A stretch of 6,093 bases of DNA from Selaginella moellendorffii (lineage: Eukaryota > Plantae > Lycopodiophyta), in NCBI RefSeq assembly GCF_000143415.4, contig NW_003314705.1:1-6093 (forward strand). Reading direction: 5' to 3'. This document shows positions 59 through 6,055 of this stretch, in pieces. The first letter of the stretch is position 1, and each line of letters opens with the position of its first letter. A program made the translations under genes and the position numbers. The notes under the pieces are model-generated. The model was not told where the DNA came from, ran no database searches, and saw only the letters and a list, made by a program, of their open reading frames with translations.

Positions 59-1160
59 GCTCGGGTCCCTGAATCGGTTCCCTCGAATGATGACGATTGG
101 GACAAGGAGCTAGCACCGGAAGATCTCGAAGAGTTTGTACTCTCGGCTTTGTCACCAGAGGCGCTCGACAACGGGAAGCCTGACATCGAAAATGCTACTG
201 GTGCTAAAGGCGATGCAGGAGTTGTTTCGGCAAAGCCAGGCCTGGACAGGGGGCAGCAAAGTCACAGCCATAGCCAAACTGGCGTCAGCAGCTCTGAGAG
301 GATAAAAGGGAAGGCAGCAGCAGTAGAACCCGAGCTTTCCGCAGGTGCTCTGGTTCTTCAGGAGCTGGAGACGGTTGTCTCGAAGGTACGCCCCTTGCGG
401 CTTTAAAAACCATTGCACATTTTTTTCATCTATGCCCGATCCTTTTTTACAGCTCGAAAGCCGGAGCAGACTTTGCTTGAGGGACGCGTTCTACAGGCTC
501 GCAGACAATGCCACGCGAAGAACCGGAGTTCAAGCCGACGCAGCGGAACTCCAGCGCTTGTCGTGGCGCACAGCATCCTTGTCCCTGAGGTACAAACACC
601 AACCCCGTCTCTTTTCTTTTCGTTCTCTCGCATTTCCAGTTTCCTGGTACGTAACGCTCGATCGAAAACCAAACAGACAGGAGCTGTCAACTAATACGAT
701 TGATCGATCCGTCGCGAGCATGCTCTTCTGCAAGGAATCTCCCCCTCCACCTCTCCCGCTCCCGGCTCCCTCCTCGCCGCCGCCTCTTCCTCCACTTCCT
801 CCGCGGCCGCGTTCTTCTCCTGGTCGTCCTCTTCGTCCCAAATCCTCAGCTTCTTCGAGCAGTAGCATTCCAAAGAAGCAACACCAACACCATCAAGCTC
901 CGCTGGGCAACAACACCAACAAGAAGTTGTCGCTGGCCCCAGCTCACAAGCATCGTTGTGCTGGATCGACCAGCGTGCTACGAACAGCCACGACATTGCG
1001 AGCGACGCCGGCGGCGATCCCAGGAGCAGCTGCCAGGAACACCAAGAGTTTGATACTACTCCCGCCACCAGCGGCCACCAAGCGAAGATCGCCAAATGCC
1101 ACTACTACTTTTACTAGTACTAGTACTACTACGACGACTAACAAACGAGGCAAGCTCTGA
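59..1160 (+). CDS. LNK: LNK (NIGHT LIGHT-INDUCIBLE AND CLOCK-REGULATED)-family protein, 5'-partial. Exons 59-385, 453-589 and probably 677-1160; the middle intron is uncertain.
   Basis: Acceptor TTTTGGCAG|G at 57-58. The phase-0 intron 386-452 joins ORF 41..406 to ORF 345..1160, giving LQELETVVSK|LESRSRLCLRDAFYRLADNA (LNK R1-like, cf. LDxRTKLCIRDSLYRLA) followed by ELSTNTIDRSVASMLF (R2-like, cf. ETxTNPIDRSIAHLLF). Stop TGA at 1158-1160. Motifs were recognised from memory, not by a search. Confidence 0.85.
386..452 (+). other. Spliceosomal intron (67 nt, phase 0) within LNK R1 region
   Basis: AAG|GTACGC donor, T-rich interior, CCTTTTTTACAG|C acceptor. Removal restores a continuous LNK R1 motif and skips the in-frame TAA at 404-406. 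Confidence 0.88.
590..676 (+). other. Probable intron between LNK R1 and R2; 3' boundary ambiguous
   Basis: GAG|GTACAA donor at 590, pyrimidine tract about 607-637, candidate AGs at 638-639, 675-676 and 679-680. The 590-676 intron (87 nt) keeps the frame, and the unspliced frame is also open. Confidence 0.5.
1101..1140 (+). repeat. Imperfect (ACT/ACG)n trinucleotide run encoding a poly-Thr/Ser tract
   Basis: actactacttttactagtactagtactactacgacgacta encodes TTTFTSTSTTTTT at the LNK C-terminus. Confidence 0.85.
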
Positions 1161-2507: not shown

Positions 2508-5087
2508 ATGCTTTGGGAGAACTACGCGTCGGCTCTTCGATGGTGCGCCAAGACCAGGTCGCTCGCCCAGGGAAAACGAATCCATTGGGCGCTGATCGAG
2601 GAATTGGGCGACCATCCTGGCGCGCTCTTGGGGAATCTCTTGATCGGCATGTATGGGAGGTGTGGCTGCTTGGGAGAGGCTCGCGAGGCGTTTGAGAGGT
2701 TGAGCGAGAGAGATGGGTCGTCCTGGGACGCGATGCTGGGAGCGTATGCCCAGAATGGGGATGTGGGCGGTGCTAGGCGGTGCTTCGAGACAATGCCGGC
2801 GAGGTCTAGCGGCTCGTGGCGCGGTTTGCTGTGGGCATTGGCGCGCAGTGGGCGGGGAGGCGAGGCGATGGAGATGCTCAGTAGGATGGATCAGGAAGGC
2901 GTGGATATCCAGCTCGCAGCGCTCGCCGCCGCCGTGAGCGCCTGTAAGAACCTCCAGCAAGGGATCGCCATTCACGAAGAGATTGCTGCCGGCGGAGTAG
3001 AGTGTGAGGCAATTCTTGCAACAGCACTTATAAATATGTTTGTTAAGTTGCGTTGCTTGCAAAGAGCCAAGGATTTGTTTGAGAGAGTTCGCCCTTCCAG
3101 CGCAGTGGCGTGGACAATTCTCATTGTAGCAAATGCCCAAGAAGGGCATCTTGATCTAGCGCAGCACCTCTTTAGAAACATGCCAGAAAGAACCTTGATC
3201 TCATGGACAAGTATGATCACAATACTTGCAAGAGCCTCCCAAATCCACGAAAGCTGGAGCTACTTCCAAAAACTGCCAAGCCGAAGCGTAGTCTCTTGGA
3301 ACGCTATAATTGCAGCATTTACCGTAACAGGGCATCCATGTCGAGCACTAAAATGCTTTGGAGAGATGGACCTTGACGGCGTGGAGATGGATTCCATCAC
3401 CTTCGTATGCGCCATGTACGCTTGTTCCATCGTGGGCGAGTTACAAATTTGCAAAATTCTCCATGCCGGGCTCGTGGATCGCAAGATCCTGATCGAGACC
3501 GCAGTTGCCAACGCGCTGGTTTCCATGTATGCCAAATGCGGGGAAATGGCCGCCGCCCAATCGATCCTCGCGGCGATGACTTCTCACAACTCTCACAGCG
3601 GCCGCGCCCACAACACCCTCATCGCTGCATTTGCCCAGAGAGGCCAGATCGAGGAGGCACAGCGCGTCTTCGACCAAATGCCTACCACCGCCATCGACAC
3701 CGTCTCGTGGAACGCGCTCCTCGCAGCCTACACTCGCGGCGGGCGGACGATCGAGGCCGCCAGGATCTTCGACGCCATGGCGATGATCCAGTGCAACACC
3801 ATCACCTGGAACACCATGATCTCGGGCTTCCTGGACAACGATGAGCCGCATGCCGCGATCCAGGCTCTCCGGAGGATGGATCTCGAGGGCTTCCAGGCGG
3901 ATCGCGTGAGCCTGATCGCGGGAGTGTACGCGGCGGCCGGGATTGGGAGCGCCGCCGCCGGCGAGGAGCTCCTCGCTGCCGGGATGCTCGATCTCGACCG
4001 CGACTCCAGTGCCGCAGCGGGCGCGATCCATCTATATGGCCGATGCTGCAGGCTGGATCGCGCGCGGGAAATCTTCGCATCGATCGCGCGCCGCGATGCG
4101 CTGTGCTGGGACGCGATGGTGAGGAGTTTGGCGCACGCCCGGGAGCTCGGGCTCGCGCTGGCGGCGCTGGAGAGGATGCCGTACAACGACCTCTACGCGT
4201 GGAACGCGGTGGTGGCGGCGCACGCCCAGGCGGGGCTTGTACGGCAGGCGGAGGAGCTCTTCGCCGCCATGCCATACCGAAACGCAGTGTCGTGGAACAC
4301 GATGATCGCTGGCTACGCCCAAAACGGCCACCACTGCCGCGCTCTCCACCTCTTTCGATCCATGGACCTCGAGGGCGTGCCGCCCACCAAGATCTCCTTC
4401 ATCTCCTCGATCGATTCATGCGGAGAGGTGGCGGTGGCCGCGGTGGGGGCGGCGGCGGGGCCGCTCCTCCACGCCGAGATCGCTGGGAAGAGCTTCGAGT
4501 GGGACGTGGGCGTGGCCACCGCGGTGATTAGCATGTACGGCAAGCTCGGCCTCCTGGACCGCTCACTGGCGGTATTCCACGGCATGCCGCGGAGGACCGT
4601 GGTACCGTACAATGCCACCGCCGCGGCGCTGGCCGAGAATGGCCGTTCCCGCGACGCGCTGCACTTCCTCCACACGATGCTGCTCGACGCCGTGACGCCC
4701 AGCGACGTGAGCTTCCTCATCGCCATCGCGGCGTGCAGCCACGCCGGGCTGTACGAGGATGGATTGGAGCGCTCGGCTGGGATGAGCCAGGATCACGGGC
4801 TTGATCCCAGCTTCGATCACTACCTTTGTGTGGTGGATCTTTTGGGACGGGCCGGGCAGCTGGGCGACGCCGAGGAGCTGCTGTGCGTGATGCCGTACGA
4901 GCCCAACGTGGTAGCTTGGACCGCGCTGCTTGCCGCCAGCGTCAACCACTGTGACGTACACCGCGCGGTGCGTGCCGCGGGGCGGGTGCTCGAGCTCAAG
5001 CACGACCCGGCCGCCTATTCTTTGCTCTTGAACATTTGCTCTCCAAGACTGGAAACCAACTGTCAAGATAATATAGACTTTCTTTGA
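2508..5087 (+). CDS. PLS-class pentatricopeptide repeat protein, E subgroup (E1 plus truncated E2, no DYW); likely organellar C-to-U RNA-editing specificity factor
   Basis: Intronless 859-aa ORF with repeated SWN(A/T)xIxxY/AQxG, NALVSMYAKCG and MDLEG motifs. Terminal P2-L2-S2 (SFLIAIAACSHAG...HYLCVVDLLGRAG), E1 (VVAWTALL, from 4908) and an E2 start (AAYSLLLNI, from 5010). No HxE/CxxC deaminase motif or DYW end. Confidence 0.96.
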   Translation: MLWENYASALRWCAKTRSLAQGKRIHWALIEELGDHPGALLGNLLIGMYGRCGCLGEAREAFERLSERDGSSWDAMLGAYAQNGDVGGARRCFETMPARSSGSWRGLLWALARSGRGGEAMEMLSRMDQEGVDIQLAALAAAVSACKNLQQGIAIHEEIAAGGVECEAILATALINMFVKLRCLQRAKDLFERVRPSSAVAWTILIVANAQEGHLDLAQHLFRNMPERTLISWTSMITILARASQIHESWSYFQKLPSRSVVSWNAIIAAFTVTGHPCRALKCFGEMDLDGVEMDSITFVCAMYACSIVGELQICKILHAGLVDRKILIETAVANALVSMYAKCGEMAAAQSILAAMTSHNSHSGRAHNTLIAAFAQRGQIEEAQRVFDQMPTTAIDTVSWNALLAAYTRGGRTIEAARIFDAMAMIQCNTITWNTMISGFLDNDEPHAAIQALRRMDLEGFQADRVSLIAGVYAAAGIGSAAAGEELLAAGMLDLDRDSSAAAGAIHLYGRCCRLDRAREIFASIARRDALCWDAMVRSLAHARELGLALAALERMPYNDLYAWNAVVAAHAQAGLVRQAEELFAAMPYRNAVSWNTMIAGYAQNGHHCRALHLFRSMDLEGVPPTKISFISSIDSCGEVAVAAVGAAAGPLLHAEIAGKSFEWDVGVATAVISMYGKLGLLDRSLAVFHGMPRRTVVPYNATAAALAENGRSRDALHFLHTMLLDAVTPSDVSFLIAIAACSHAGLYEDGLERSAGMSQDHGLDPSFDHYLCVVDLLGRAGQLGDAEELLCVMPYEPNVVAWTALLAASVNHCDVHRAVRAAGRVLELKHDPAAYSLLLNICSPRLETNCQDNIDFL

Positions 5088-5315: not shown

Positions 5316-5326
5316 TTTATTTTATT
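5316..5326 (-). terminator. Tandem AATAAA polyadenylation-like signals of the minus-strand gene
   Basis: The + strand has TTTATT at 5316-5321 and 5321-5326, about 25-30 nt past the TGA at 5351-5349. Confidence 0.55.
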
Positions 5327-5348: not shown

Positions 5349-5977
5349 TCAGTTTGCATAGAGCAGGGCAAGACCAGACCGGAGGATATAAATCACCCCA
5401 TTAAGTACAAAATAGATGCAGCTGTTAGGACGAACAATAACAATTACGTTTTGCACAATTCTGATACAGCCTTGGATGCTTACAATTATAGCTGCATCAA
5501 CTCTGATATATCTGAATGGAGACCACACAGGGAAGGCATTCCCGAAATACTTGCATATGATGATGATTATTTGCGGGCAAGGGTAGCCACCCGGCACGTA
5601 AATCACAATAATCTCAAGGATGATGATGATGGGAAGAAATATTACTTTGAGAAGGGGAACTTTAACACAAACGTCATTCAGGTTGGTTATAACTTGCTGA
5701 AGTGAGCCGTTCACTTTGTTAACCGAATCTGCTGGGACACCAATGTCCTGTTCACCTGAGACCTGCTTCAGAGAACGCATTGTACCTTTAAAATCATATG
5801 AAAAAACAATTAGTAGGCTACTAATATATATAGTGAGAGATAGATATATATACCAGAAAGATCTTCACTGAGTGAGATATCTTGCTCCGGAACAGAGACG
5901 TCCATGCCAAAAACATTTGTGGATGCTAAGAAGAGGCACAGGAGCGAGGCAACAATTGCCACATTTAACTTTGCCAT
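5349..5977 (-). CDS. Two-exon secreted prepro-protein (186 aa) of unknown family with an Ile/Val-rich, Cys-containing C-terminal domain. Exons 5977-5854 and 5785-5349.
   Basis: ATG GCA at 5977 starts a classic signal peptide MAKLNVAIVASLLCLFLASTNVFG. The phase-1 intron 5853-5786 joins it exactly in frame to ORF 5349..5780 (…EDLS|GTMRSLKQ…). 124+437 = 561 nt. A TATA-like box lies upstream and AATAAA downstream. Confidence 0.8.
5786..5853 (-). other. Spliceosomal intron (68 nt, phase 1)
   Basis: On the minus strand: CTG|GTATAT donor, CTAAT branch point (5813-5809), T-rich tract and TTTTAAAG|GT acceptor. It contains the stop of ORF 5810..6046. Confidence 0.82.
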
Positions 5978-6047
5978 TTGATTAATGCACAAATATAGGG
6001 GAAATGAACAGGAAAAGTGTGTGTTGTAAGTTTTGAAATGATACATG

Positions 6048-6055
6048 TTTAAATA
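6048..6055 (-). promoter_or_regulatory. Candidate TATA box (TATTTAAA) for the secreted-protein gene
   Basis: About 70 nt upstream of ATG 5977, followed by a C/A-rich then pyrimidine-rich leader-like stretch. Confidence 0.4.

What the first reader, a model, noticed from the sequence alone, without database searches (positions are those of the whole stretch)
5349..5977. Hidden two-exon gene for an unassigned secreted protein with an extreme Ile/Val-rich domain
Seen: splicing 5853-5786 fuses two separate ORF-track entries into MAKLNVAIVASLLCLFLASTNVFG-MDVSVPEQDISLSEDLSGTMRSLKQVSGEQDIG…LYAN (186 aa). By hand count the last 107 residues (5672-5352) contain 24 Ile, 15 Val (about 36% together) and 5 Cys, and only two acidic residues. 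They form short beta-branched runs (IIII, IIVIYV, IIIII, VIVIV, VIYIL) separated by P/G/N turns. Inference: this looks like a self-assembling beta-rich, surface-active or membrane-active protein (functionally analogous to a hydrophobin or amyloid; a spore-wall, cuticle or defence role), kept soluble by an acidic pro-region, rather than a Leu-rich helical membrane protein. I do not recognise the family.
Basis: partly seen in the sequence, partly recalled or inferred. Interest (0 to 1): 0.75.

Follow-up and report, generated by a model that had tools for sequence, protein, structure and literature searches.

The report
Spikemoss-only small hydrophobic helical membrane protein
This is a real two-exon gene of the spikemoss Selaginella moellendorffii, already listed in RefSeq as an uncharacterised protein. 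It belongs to a small gene family found only in that species and most likely encodes a small helical membrane protein, not a beta-rich amyloid or hydrophobin-like one.

Summary
The last 107 residues contain 24 Ile, 15 Val, 5 Cys and 2 acidic residues.

The gene is not hidden. The product is letter-for-letter RefSeq XP_024521635.1 / XP_024523909.1, an "uncharacterized protein" of Selaginella moellendorffii.

About 16 gene models in 9 clusters, all from S. moellendorffii, share 55-59% identity with it. They share the signal peptide, an invariant DLSGTMRSLK motif at the exon junction, and a 102-residue hydrophobic domain without any indel. A word search of 5.8 billion proteins and an exhaustive profile search of 1.84 billion representatives found no relative outside this species. 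Pfam, PDB sequences and the ESM Atlas gave no match.

The beta-rich, hydrophobin or amyloid reading is not supported:
- Two AlphaFold2 models are all-helical, with five helices of 19-24 residues.
- Hydrophobicity repeats at 90-110 degrees, the helical period.
- The domain has GRAVY 1.3-1.7 and only 20% polar residues.
- Four segments exceed the Kyte-Doolittle transmembrane threshold.

Best reading: a lineage-restricted membrane protein with a cleaved signal peptide and four membrane-spanning helices. Its function is unknown. Interest is modest.

The parts
6048..6055 (-). TATA-like element TATTTAAA, 78 nt upstream of the ATG
   Evidence: Read directly from the sequence. It matches a consensus only; function was not tested.
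5906..5977 (-). Start codon and 24-residue signal-peptide-like N-terminus, with predicted cleavage after VFG
   Evidence: Translation. The 19-residue window has Kyte-Doolittle ~2.0. Small residues sit at -3 and -1. Paralogues conserve the same kind of N-terminus (MAKSxIAFILPLACLLLAS..VSA). No SignalP tool was available.
5854..5977 (-). Coding exon 1 (41 codons plus 1 base)
   Evidence: The product matches residues 1-41 of RefSeq protein P0004.
5786..5853 (-). Intron, 68 nt, GT..AG, 22% GC, phase 1
   Evidence: Removing it reproduces P0004 exactly. Reading through it hits a stop instead (ORF 5810..6046).
5349..5785 (-). Coding exon 2 including the TGA stop (5349-5351)
   Evidence: Homologues were found with this exon alone.
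5834..5869 (-). Exon-1 part (S37-E-D-L-S41 plus the first base of G42, 5869-5854) of the family-invariant motif D-L-S-G-T-M-R-S-L-K, followed by the first 20 intron bases. The rest of the motif lies in exon 2 (5785-5766). R-S-L-K fits the subtilase RXLX site.
   Evidence: Columns S37 and D39-K48 are invariant in alignment A1. The RXLX/RXXL recognition sequences are quoted in PMC4983112. Cleavage here is an inference and was not tested.
5358..5663 (-). Hydrophobic domain of 102 residues (K83-Y184). It has four hydrophobic helices in two hairpins, with turns PGGYPCP and (R/T)PNSC and invariant E99 and K120.
   Evidence: AlphaFold2 helices 85-107, 111-129, 139-158 and 164-182, repeated in the paralogue. 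The length is invariant at 102 aa and I+V is 33-36% across the family.
5664..5732 (-). Amphipathic helix H1 (residues 60-82/83) just before the hydrophobic domain. It contains the N-G-S sequon.
   Evidence: AlphaFold2 helix 60-83 with pLDDT 87-91. Its 100-degree hydrophobic moment is 0.43 and its alpha index is 2.99. Every full-length member has one N-x-S/T sequon N-terminal to the domain.
5316..5326 (-). Two overlapping AATAAA poly(A)-signal-like motifs, 23-33 nt after the stop
   Evidence: Read directly from the sequence. Consensus match only.
5451..5705 (+). Plus-strand 84-aa ORF. It is the same-register antisense shadow of the Ile/Val-rich domain, not a gene.
   Evidence: It has no Pfam family and no homologue. 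Antisense of ATH/GTN codons cannot give stops. The frame stays open with probability 0.14-0.54 under realistic codon usage.

Best explanation
This is a genuine protein-coding gene of Selaginella moellendorffii, already annotated, and a member of a small tandemly duplicated family seen only in that species.

The protein enters the ER through a cleavable signal peptide. Its short acidic N-terminal segment would then face the lumen or the outside of the cell. That segment carries an invariant DLSGTMRSLK motif and one N-glycosylation sequon.

An amphipathic helix follows, then four hydrophobic helices of 19-23 residues arranged as two helical hairpins. These sit in a membrane of the secretory pathway or in the plasma membrane as a compact bundle. 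The narrow polar stripes of the helices, including the invariant E99 and K120, would face each other inside the bundle.

The Ile/Val richness is the composition of membrane-spanning helices, not of beta strands. The biochemical role is unknown.

Shown: the gene model, the family, the absence of outside relatives, the helical prediction and the hydrophobicity.

Inferred: signal-peptide cleavage, membrane insertion, topology and any processing at RSLK.
For: Gene model and family:
- The spliced product is identical to RefSeq protein P0004.
- Paralogues at 55-59% identity conserve the signal peptide, the junction motif and a 102-aa domain with no indel.
- Conservation is highest (77%) in the first hairpin.

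Structure prediction:
- AlphaFold2 gives helices 60-83, 85-107, 111-129, 139-158 and 164-182, with pLDDT up to 91. The same layout appears in the paralogue.
- The best fold matches are generic up-down helical bundles and the ZnT membrane domain, at Z 8-11.

Hydrophobicity:
- Kyte-Doolittle 19-residue peaks are 2.73, 1.75, 2.04 and 1.75. All exceed the 1.6 threshold of the published method, which I recalled from memory.
- A summed Hessa-scale score is about +0.4 to -1.2 for helix 2 and -0.6 to +2.9 for the others.
- The domain has GRAVY 1.32-1.72 and only 20-21% polar plus charged residues.
- Hydrophobic periodicity is at 90-110 degrees.

UniProt's automatic name for several paralogues is 'Transmembrane protein'.
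Against: - No transcript, proteomic or localisation data could be consulted. XP_ records are predictions.
- Only helix 2 is unambiguously membrane-grade. Helices 3-5 are amphipathic (moment 0.32-0.37) and marginal on the Hessa scale. A soluble or lipid-loaded bundle with helix 2 buried is therefore not excluded.
- The AlphaFold2 models rest on 9-10 close paralogues (mean pLDDT 59-64). AlphaFold tends to draw hydrophobic segments as helices.
- The charge distribution gives no clear positive-inside signal.
- No dedicated signal-peptide or topology predictor was available.
- Paralogue DNA could not be fetched, so selection (dN/dS) was not measured.
Confidence: 0.6

Rival explanations
1. A secreted, soluble or lipid-loaded five-helix bundle. 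Four amphipathic helices would wrap the very hydrophobic helix 2. The protein would carry lipid (cuticle or spore-wall precursors), or would insert into a target membrane after release, in the manner of pore-forming helical toxins. It might first be processed at RSLK.
For: - The protein has a signal peptide.
- Four of five helices show clear amphipathic periodicity around one uniformly hydrophobic helix.
- AlphaFold2 packs them into a compact bundle whose best structural matches are soluble four- and five-helix bundles, at Z 9-11.
- The invariant RSLK motif fits a subtilase RXLX site.
- A tandemly duplicated, species-restricted family is typical of defence or surface proteins. This last point is an inference.
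Against: - The domain has only 20% polar residues and GRAVY 1.3-1.7, far outside what I recall as the usual range for soluble proteins.
- The polar faces of the helices are one residue wide.
- All four helices have the length of a membrane span.
- The fold matches fall below the level at which helical-bundle Z-scores mean anything (tool note).
Confidence: 0.22
2. One reading: a beta-rich, self-assembling, surface-active protein, functionally like a hydrophobin or a functional amyloid. An acidic pro-region would keep it soluble.
For: - Beta-branched residues make up 36% of the domain. Runs such as IIIILEIIVIYV would be highly aggregation-prone in water; this rests on the known beta propensity of Ile and Val.
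- The protein has a signal peptide and an acidic N-terminal segment.
- One segment (139-158) has about equal power at 100-110 and 170-180 degrees.
Against: - Both AlphaFold2 models have no beta structure beyond two 3-residue bridges.
- Helical periodicity dominates in four of five segments.
- The hydrophobic segments are 19-23 residues long, not strand-length.
- Only three Cys are invariant (C111, C119, C164), so the eight-Cys hydrophobin pattern is absent.
- No hydrophobin, chaplin or curlin Pfam family appeared even at E up to 10.
- There is no internal sequence repeat of the strand-turn-strand kind.
Confidence: 0.08
3. Not a functional protein gene. Either it is a decaying or never-translated young ORF, or the plus-strand frame 5451-5705 is the coding one.
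For: - The family is confined to one species.
- No expression data were seen.
- The antisense frame is open for about 118 codons.
Against: - Intact paralogues at 55-59% identity keep the ORF, the signal peptide, the junction motif and an indel-free 102-aa domain.
- The plus-strand frame has no start before 5451, no family and no homologue.
- Its openness is expected from antisense Ile/Val codons (P 0.14-0.54).
- The minus-strand model has canonical splice sites, a TATA-like box and AATAAA motifs.
Confidence: 0.07

Closest known systems
DUF1218 / MWL-type land-plant proteins (signal peptide plus four membrane helices, about 170-190 aa). Architecture recalled from memory.
   Same: The overall layout matches: an N-terminal signal peptide, a small size, four hydrophobic helices and a few conserved Cys.
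   Different: No Pfam DUF1218 match, even at E up to 10, for any of nine members. This family has an extra acidic segment and an amphipathic helix before the first span, and it has no relatives outside S. moellendorffii.
Oleosin (hydrophobic hairpin with a proline knot)
   Same: Both have a long, very hydrophobic helical hairpin (residues 85-129) broken at its centre by a proline-rich turn (PGGYPCP).
   Different: As I recall, oleosins have no signal peptide, a roughly 72-residue hairpin and a PX5SPX3P knot. This protein has a signal peptide, two hairpins and no Pfam oleosin match.
Fungal hydrophobins and functional amyloids (chaplins, curli)
   Same: All are small, carry a signal peptide, are very hydrophobic and contain Cys.
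   Different: The eight-Cys pattern is absent, with only three invariant Cys. The predicted structure is helical and the periodicity is helical. There is no family match.
Small multidrug resistance proteins (EmrE type). Analogy only, recalled from memory.
   Same: Both have about 100 residues forming four hydrophobic helices, with one invariant Glu in the middle of the first helix (E99).
   Different: There is no sequence match to any Pfam family. This protein is eukaryotic and has a signal peptide and an N-terminal extension. Transport activity is pure conjecture.
RCI2/PMP3 small hydrophobic plant membrane proteins
   Same: Both are small Ile/Val/Leu-rich helical-hairpin membrane proteins of plants.
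   Different: As I recall, RCI2/PMP3 proteins are about 54 residues long, with two spans and no signal peptide. No Pfam match was found here.

Membership tests
Hydrophobin (Pfam PF01185 / PF06766) | Eight conserved cysteines in the characteristic spacing | tested here: not met
   The domain has five Cys (four within the 102-aa core). Only C111, C119 and C164 are invariant in the family.
Hydrophobin (Pfam PF01185 / PF06766) | Match to the family profile | tested here: not met
   No hydrophobin family was listed at E up to 10 for any of nine members.
Functional amyloid / beta-solenoid | Repeated strand-turn units with alternating (about 160-180 degree) hydrophobic periodicity and a predicted beta structure | tested here: not met
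   Periodicity peaks at 90-110 degrees in four of five segments. AlphaFold2 is all-helical for two members. Segment 139-158 alone is ambiguous.
Oleosin (PF01277) | No signal peptide, a hairpin of about 72 residues with a proline knot, and a profile match | tested here: not met
   A signal-peptide-like N-terminus is present and there is no Pfam match. Only the proline-rich mid-hairpin turn is reminiscent.
DUF1218 (PF06749) | Profile match to the four-span conserved region | tested here: not met
   Not listed at E up to 10. A profile-profile comparison was not run.
Integral membrane protein (general class) | At least one segment of about 19 residues above Kyte-Doolittle 1.6, plus further spans | tested here: met
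   Peaks of 2.73, 1.75, 2.04 and 1.75 in P0004 and 2.2-2.9 in paralogues. Domain GRAVY is 1.3-1.7. Actual insertion was not tested.
Secretory-pathway protein with cleavable signal peptide | An n-h-c region with small residues at -3 and -1, followed by a polar mature N-terminus | tested here: inconclusive
   The pattern is visible by eye and conserved in paralogues. No SignalP-type predictor was available.
Substrate of S1P/SBT6.1-type subtilase | An RXLX or RXXL site in a luminal pro-region, with demonstrated cleavage | not testable with these tools
   R-S-L-K is invariant in all full-length members except the mis-spliced model P0011. The motif definition comes from PMC4983112. A four-residue motif is weak evidence.
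Taxonomically restricted (orphan) gene family | No detectable homologue outside the lineage in exhaustive searches | tested here: met
   - An exhaustive profile search of 1.84 billion representatives gave 5 hits, all S. moellendorffii.
- Two word searches of 5.8 billion proteins gave only S. moellendorffii.
- Pfam, PDB sequences and the Atlas gave nothing.
- Caveat: how well other lycophyte genomes are covered in these libraries is unknown.

The most novel reading that the evidence does not exclude
The family is a Selaginella-specific invention with an active role: a pro-protein cut at the invariant RSLK site by an S1P/SBT6.1-type subtilase. Cleavage would release or activate a minimal four-helix membrane module with a buried, invariant Glu-Lys pair. 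That module would act either as a tiny proton-coupled transporter or channel, or as a membrane-inserting defence protein.
Probability: 0.1. Interest if true: 0.6.

Novelty: new member of a known kind. Interest (0 to 1): 0.3.

Why it matters
If the reading is right, this is one more lineage-restricted small membrane protein family. It is useful mainly as a well-defined case for studying how new membrane proteins arise and duplicate in a lycophyte.

Three features are unusual enough to merit a simple localisation and topology experiment:
- The conserved Ile/Val bias, 33-36% against roughly 20% in typical membrane helices (the latter figure is from memory).
- The indel-free 102-residue core with an invariant Glu and Lys inside the helices.
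- The invariant junction motif.

The finding does not open a long-standing question, and the gene model itself is already public.

Tried and rejected
- Plus-strand coding frame (5352-5705): no Pfam family, no homologue, and its open frame is explained by antisense Ile/Val codons. Rejected.
- Pfam on the window protein and on all nine aligned members at E up to 10: only sub-threshold noise, OrgC at 13.5 bits and CRIC_ras_sig.
- PDB sequence profile search at E up to 10: nothing.
- ESM Atlas by features: no usable hit, tried twice. By structure: all TM-scores below 0.5 by query.
- Foldseek against PDB: no match at E of 0.001 or better.
- VIA-align wide: generic helical bundles at Z up to 11.3, below the level the tool's own note calls meaningful for helical bundles.
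- Literature searches by SELMODRAFT, Smo and LOC identifiers: no papers. A general search on Selaginella orphan or secreted genes gave nothing specific.
- Earlier notes of this scan: none at this place or about this family.
Paralogue DNA, intron positions, neighbouring genes and dN/dS could therefore not be examined.
- Rfam on the window: no RNA family.
- Fibrillin link: P0016 fuses a PAP_fibrillin part to a family member, but the join falls inside the signal peptide and RefSeq keeps the two apart. I read it as a chimeric 2011 gene model.
- Joined-exon step: no joined exon sequence was handed to any search tool. Searches used exon 2 by reference (window:5352-5783:-) and the database protein P0004. 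The only join was an equality check inside a script, which printed no sequence.

Full report
**1. What is in the sequence**

Read on the minus strand, an ATG at 5977 opens a 41-codon exon. It encodes a typical secretory N-terminus, MAKLNVAIVASLLCLFLASTNVFG, followed by an acidic stretch.

- At 5853 the sequence turns into GTATAT...TTAAAG. This is 68 nt at 22% GC, with a CTAAT branch-like site and a T-rich tract.
- Reading through this stretch hits a stop (ORF 5810..6046).
- Removing it joins a split Gly codon to exon 2 (5785-5349), which runs to a TGA stop.
- The spliced CDS is 561 nt.
- Its product equals a database protein, P0004, letter for letter. P0004 is RefSeq XP_024521635.1 / XP_024523909.1, 'uncharacterized protein LOC112344007 / LOC112343050' of Selaginella moellendorffii.

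A TATTTAAA element lies 78 nt upstream of the ATG. Two AATAAA motifs lie 23-33 nt after the stop.

The exact model is already public. Only the 2011 GenBank protein set seems to lack it.

On the joined step: I handed no joined exon sequence to any search. Searches used exon 2 by reference and the database record P0004. The one join was an equality check inside a script, which printed no sequence.

**2. Which strand codes**

I reject it for four reasons.

- The plus-strand frame has no Pfam family and no homologue in the word search.
- Ile and Val codons (ATH, GTN) cannot give antisense stops.
- Given the protein sequence, the antisense frame stays open with probability 0.14 using this gene's own Leu/Ser codon usage, and 0.54 using that of the neighbouring PPR gene.
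- The minus-strand frame extends beyond the shadow ORF, carries the signal peptide and splice sites, and is conserved in paralogues.

**3. The family**

Exon 2 alone found three clusters. A profile of ten members found nine clusters. An exhaustive HMMER profile search of 1.84 billion representatives, which has no length limit, found five.

Every one is from S. moellendorffii. There are about 16 gene models on six scaffolds. Runs of adjacent locus numbers suggest tandem arrays: SELMODRAFT_407989-407993, 402881/402889/402890, and 441799/441800/412885. The assembly's two haplotypes probably double the count; that is my inference.

There are two subfamilies. One is this gene with its 97% twin P0001. 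The other is a larger group at 55-59% identity.

Features conserved across both subfamilies:
- the signal peptide type;
- an invariant D-L-S-G-T-M-R-S-L-K motif straddling the exon junction;
- one N-x-S/T sequon in the N-terminal part;
- a hydrophobic domain of exactly 102 residues, from KVP(L/F)L to LLY, with no indel and 33-36% Ile plus Val;
- invariant residues inside the domain, including E99, the PGG(Y/F)PCP turn, C119-K120-Y121, G123-N124-A125, P127-V128-W129, D138, Q153 and N162-S163-C164.

Between the subfamilies, identity is 77% in the first hairpin, against 42-50% in the flanking helices and the signal peptide.

Some old gene models are clearly faulty:
- P0011 and P0012 are mis-spliced.
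- P0005 has a read-through tail.
- P0016 is fused to a fibrillin fragment, with the join inside the signal peptide.

**4. No known relatives**

- Pfam gave only sub-threshold noise for the window protein and for all nine aligned members, even at E up to 10.
- A profile search of PDB sequences gave nothing.
- The ESM Atlas gave no usable feature hit.
- Searches of the paper library by gene identifiers returned nothing.

**5. Helix or strand**

AlphaFold2 was run on the nine-sequence alignment. It gives a disordered N-terminal 54 residues and five helices: 60-83, 85-107, 111-129, 139-158 and 164-182. Block pLDDT reaches 91.

An independent run with the divergent paralogue P0002 as target gives the same five helices. 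The Atlas's own model (pTM 0.65) matched only helical proteins, and weakly.

These models rest on shallow alignments, so I also tested the sequence directly.
- Family-averaged hydrophobicity has its spectral peak at 90-110 degrees in four of the five segments, with alpha indices of 1.5-3.0.
- Segment 85-107 is uniformly hydrophobic.
- Only segment 139-158 has comparable power near 170-180 degrees.
- The hydrophobic stretches between the P/G/N turns are 19-23 residues long. That is the length of a membrane span, not of a short beta strand.

**6. Membrane or soluble**

- Kyte-Doolittle 19-residue means peak at 2.73, 1.75, 2.04 and 1.75 for the four helices. The classical threshold, from memory of the method, is 1.6.
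- In paralogues the peaks are 2.2-2.9.
- A simple sum on the Hessa scale is about +0.4 to -1.2 for helix 2, and -0.6 to +2.9 for the others. That means one strong span and three marginal, amphipathic ones, as is common in multi-span proteins.
- The domain has GRAVY 1.32-1.72 and only 20-21% polar or charged residues.
- Structural neighbours are generic up-down bundles and the membrane domain of ZnT transporters, at Z 8-11. This is below what the tool's note calls informative for helical bundles. Foldseek found nothing.

I therefore favour a four-span membrane protein whose signal peptide is cleaved and whose N-terminus faces out. The invariant E99 and K120 would pair inside the bundle.

A secreted, lipid-filled or membrane-inserting bundle remains a live rival, because four amphipathic helices surround one very hydrophobic helix.

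**7. A lead, not a result**

R-S-L-K fits the RXLX recognition sequence quoted for the plant subtilase SBT6.1/S1P (PMC4983112). It is invariant in an otherwise variable region. A four-residue motif is weak evidence.

**8. Surroundings**

The gene converges on an 859-aa ORF at 2508-5087 on the plus strand. That ORF consists of PPR repeats. The two stop codons are 261 nt apart.

GC falls from about 0.68 in the PPR gene to about 0.39 in this gene. No RNA family was found in the window.

**9. Limits**

I could not read paralogue DNA, neighbours or intron positions, and could not measure selection.
- No transcript data, SignalP or topology predictor was available.
- Coverage of other lycophytes in the protein libraries is unknown, so 'species-restricted' means 'within these libraries'.

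**10. Verdict**

This is a real gene, already annotated and functionally uncharacterised. It belongs to a Selaginella-restricted family and is most likely a small helical multi-span membrane protein (confidence about 0.6). The hydrophobin or amyloid reading is unlikely (about 0.08). Interest is modest.

Noticed in passing
window 2508-5087 (+): An 859-aa intronless ORF made of PPR repeats (PF01535 E 1.6e-82). It has no E+ or DYW domain hit and ends in what looks like a partial E-type tail. GC drops from about 0.68 to 0.45 exactly at its end. It converges on the finding gene, with 261 nt between the two stops.
   Followed up: partly
window 1028-1073 and 2276-2321: A 46-nt direct repeat at 89% identity, 1248 nt apart. 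On both strands it produces the same short ORF peptides (QEHQEFD..TPA / GGSSIKLLVFL). It may be the ends or remnants of a repeated element.
   Followed up: no
window 345-1160 (+): A 271-aa ORF with Pro/Ser/Thr-rich low-complexity runs (PPPLPLPAPSSPPPLPPLPPRP, TSTSTTTTT). It has no Pfam family, and it is unclear whether it codes for anything.
   Followed up: partly
P0016 (SELMODRAFT_437607, 357 aa): A 2011 gene model that fuses a PAP_fibrillin fragment (PF04755, E 4.6e-22) to a family member. The join falls in the middle of the signal peptide. RefSeq has the 181-aa protein P0010 alone, so this is probably an annotation chimera. It does show that a fibrillin gene lies next to one paralogue.
   Followed up: partly
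P0005, P0011, P0012, P0013, P0014 (paralogue gene models): Several deposited models of the family look faulty or truncated: a read-through C-terminal tail (279 aa), a missed splice site (DLSGHYEV..), an internal skip, and early frame changes. Some may be pseudogenes and others annotation errors. This could not be checked without the DNA.
   Followed up: no
window 5766-5785 and 5854-5869 (-), residues 37-48: The motif S-x-D-L-S-G-T-M-R-S-L-K is invariant across both subfamilies, although the surrounding N-terminal region varies. Its R-S-L-K fits the subtilase RXLX recognition sequence.
   Followed up: partly
P0001 (XP_024537950.1, LOC112348871): A 97%-identical twin of the window gene, annotated from the internal Met25 and so lacking the signal peptide. 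It differs at six residues: Q32H, I34F, V50A, K65R, A140T and R177Q. Whether its first exon is damaged or merely unannotated is unknown.
   Followed up: no
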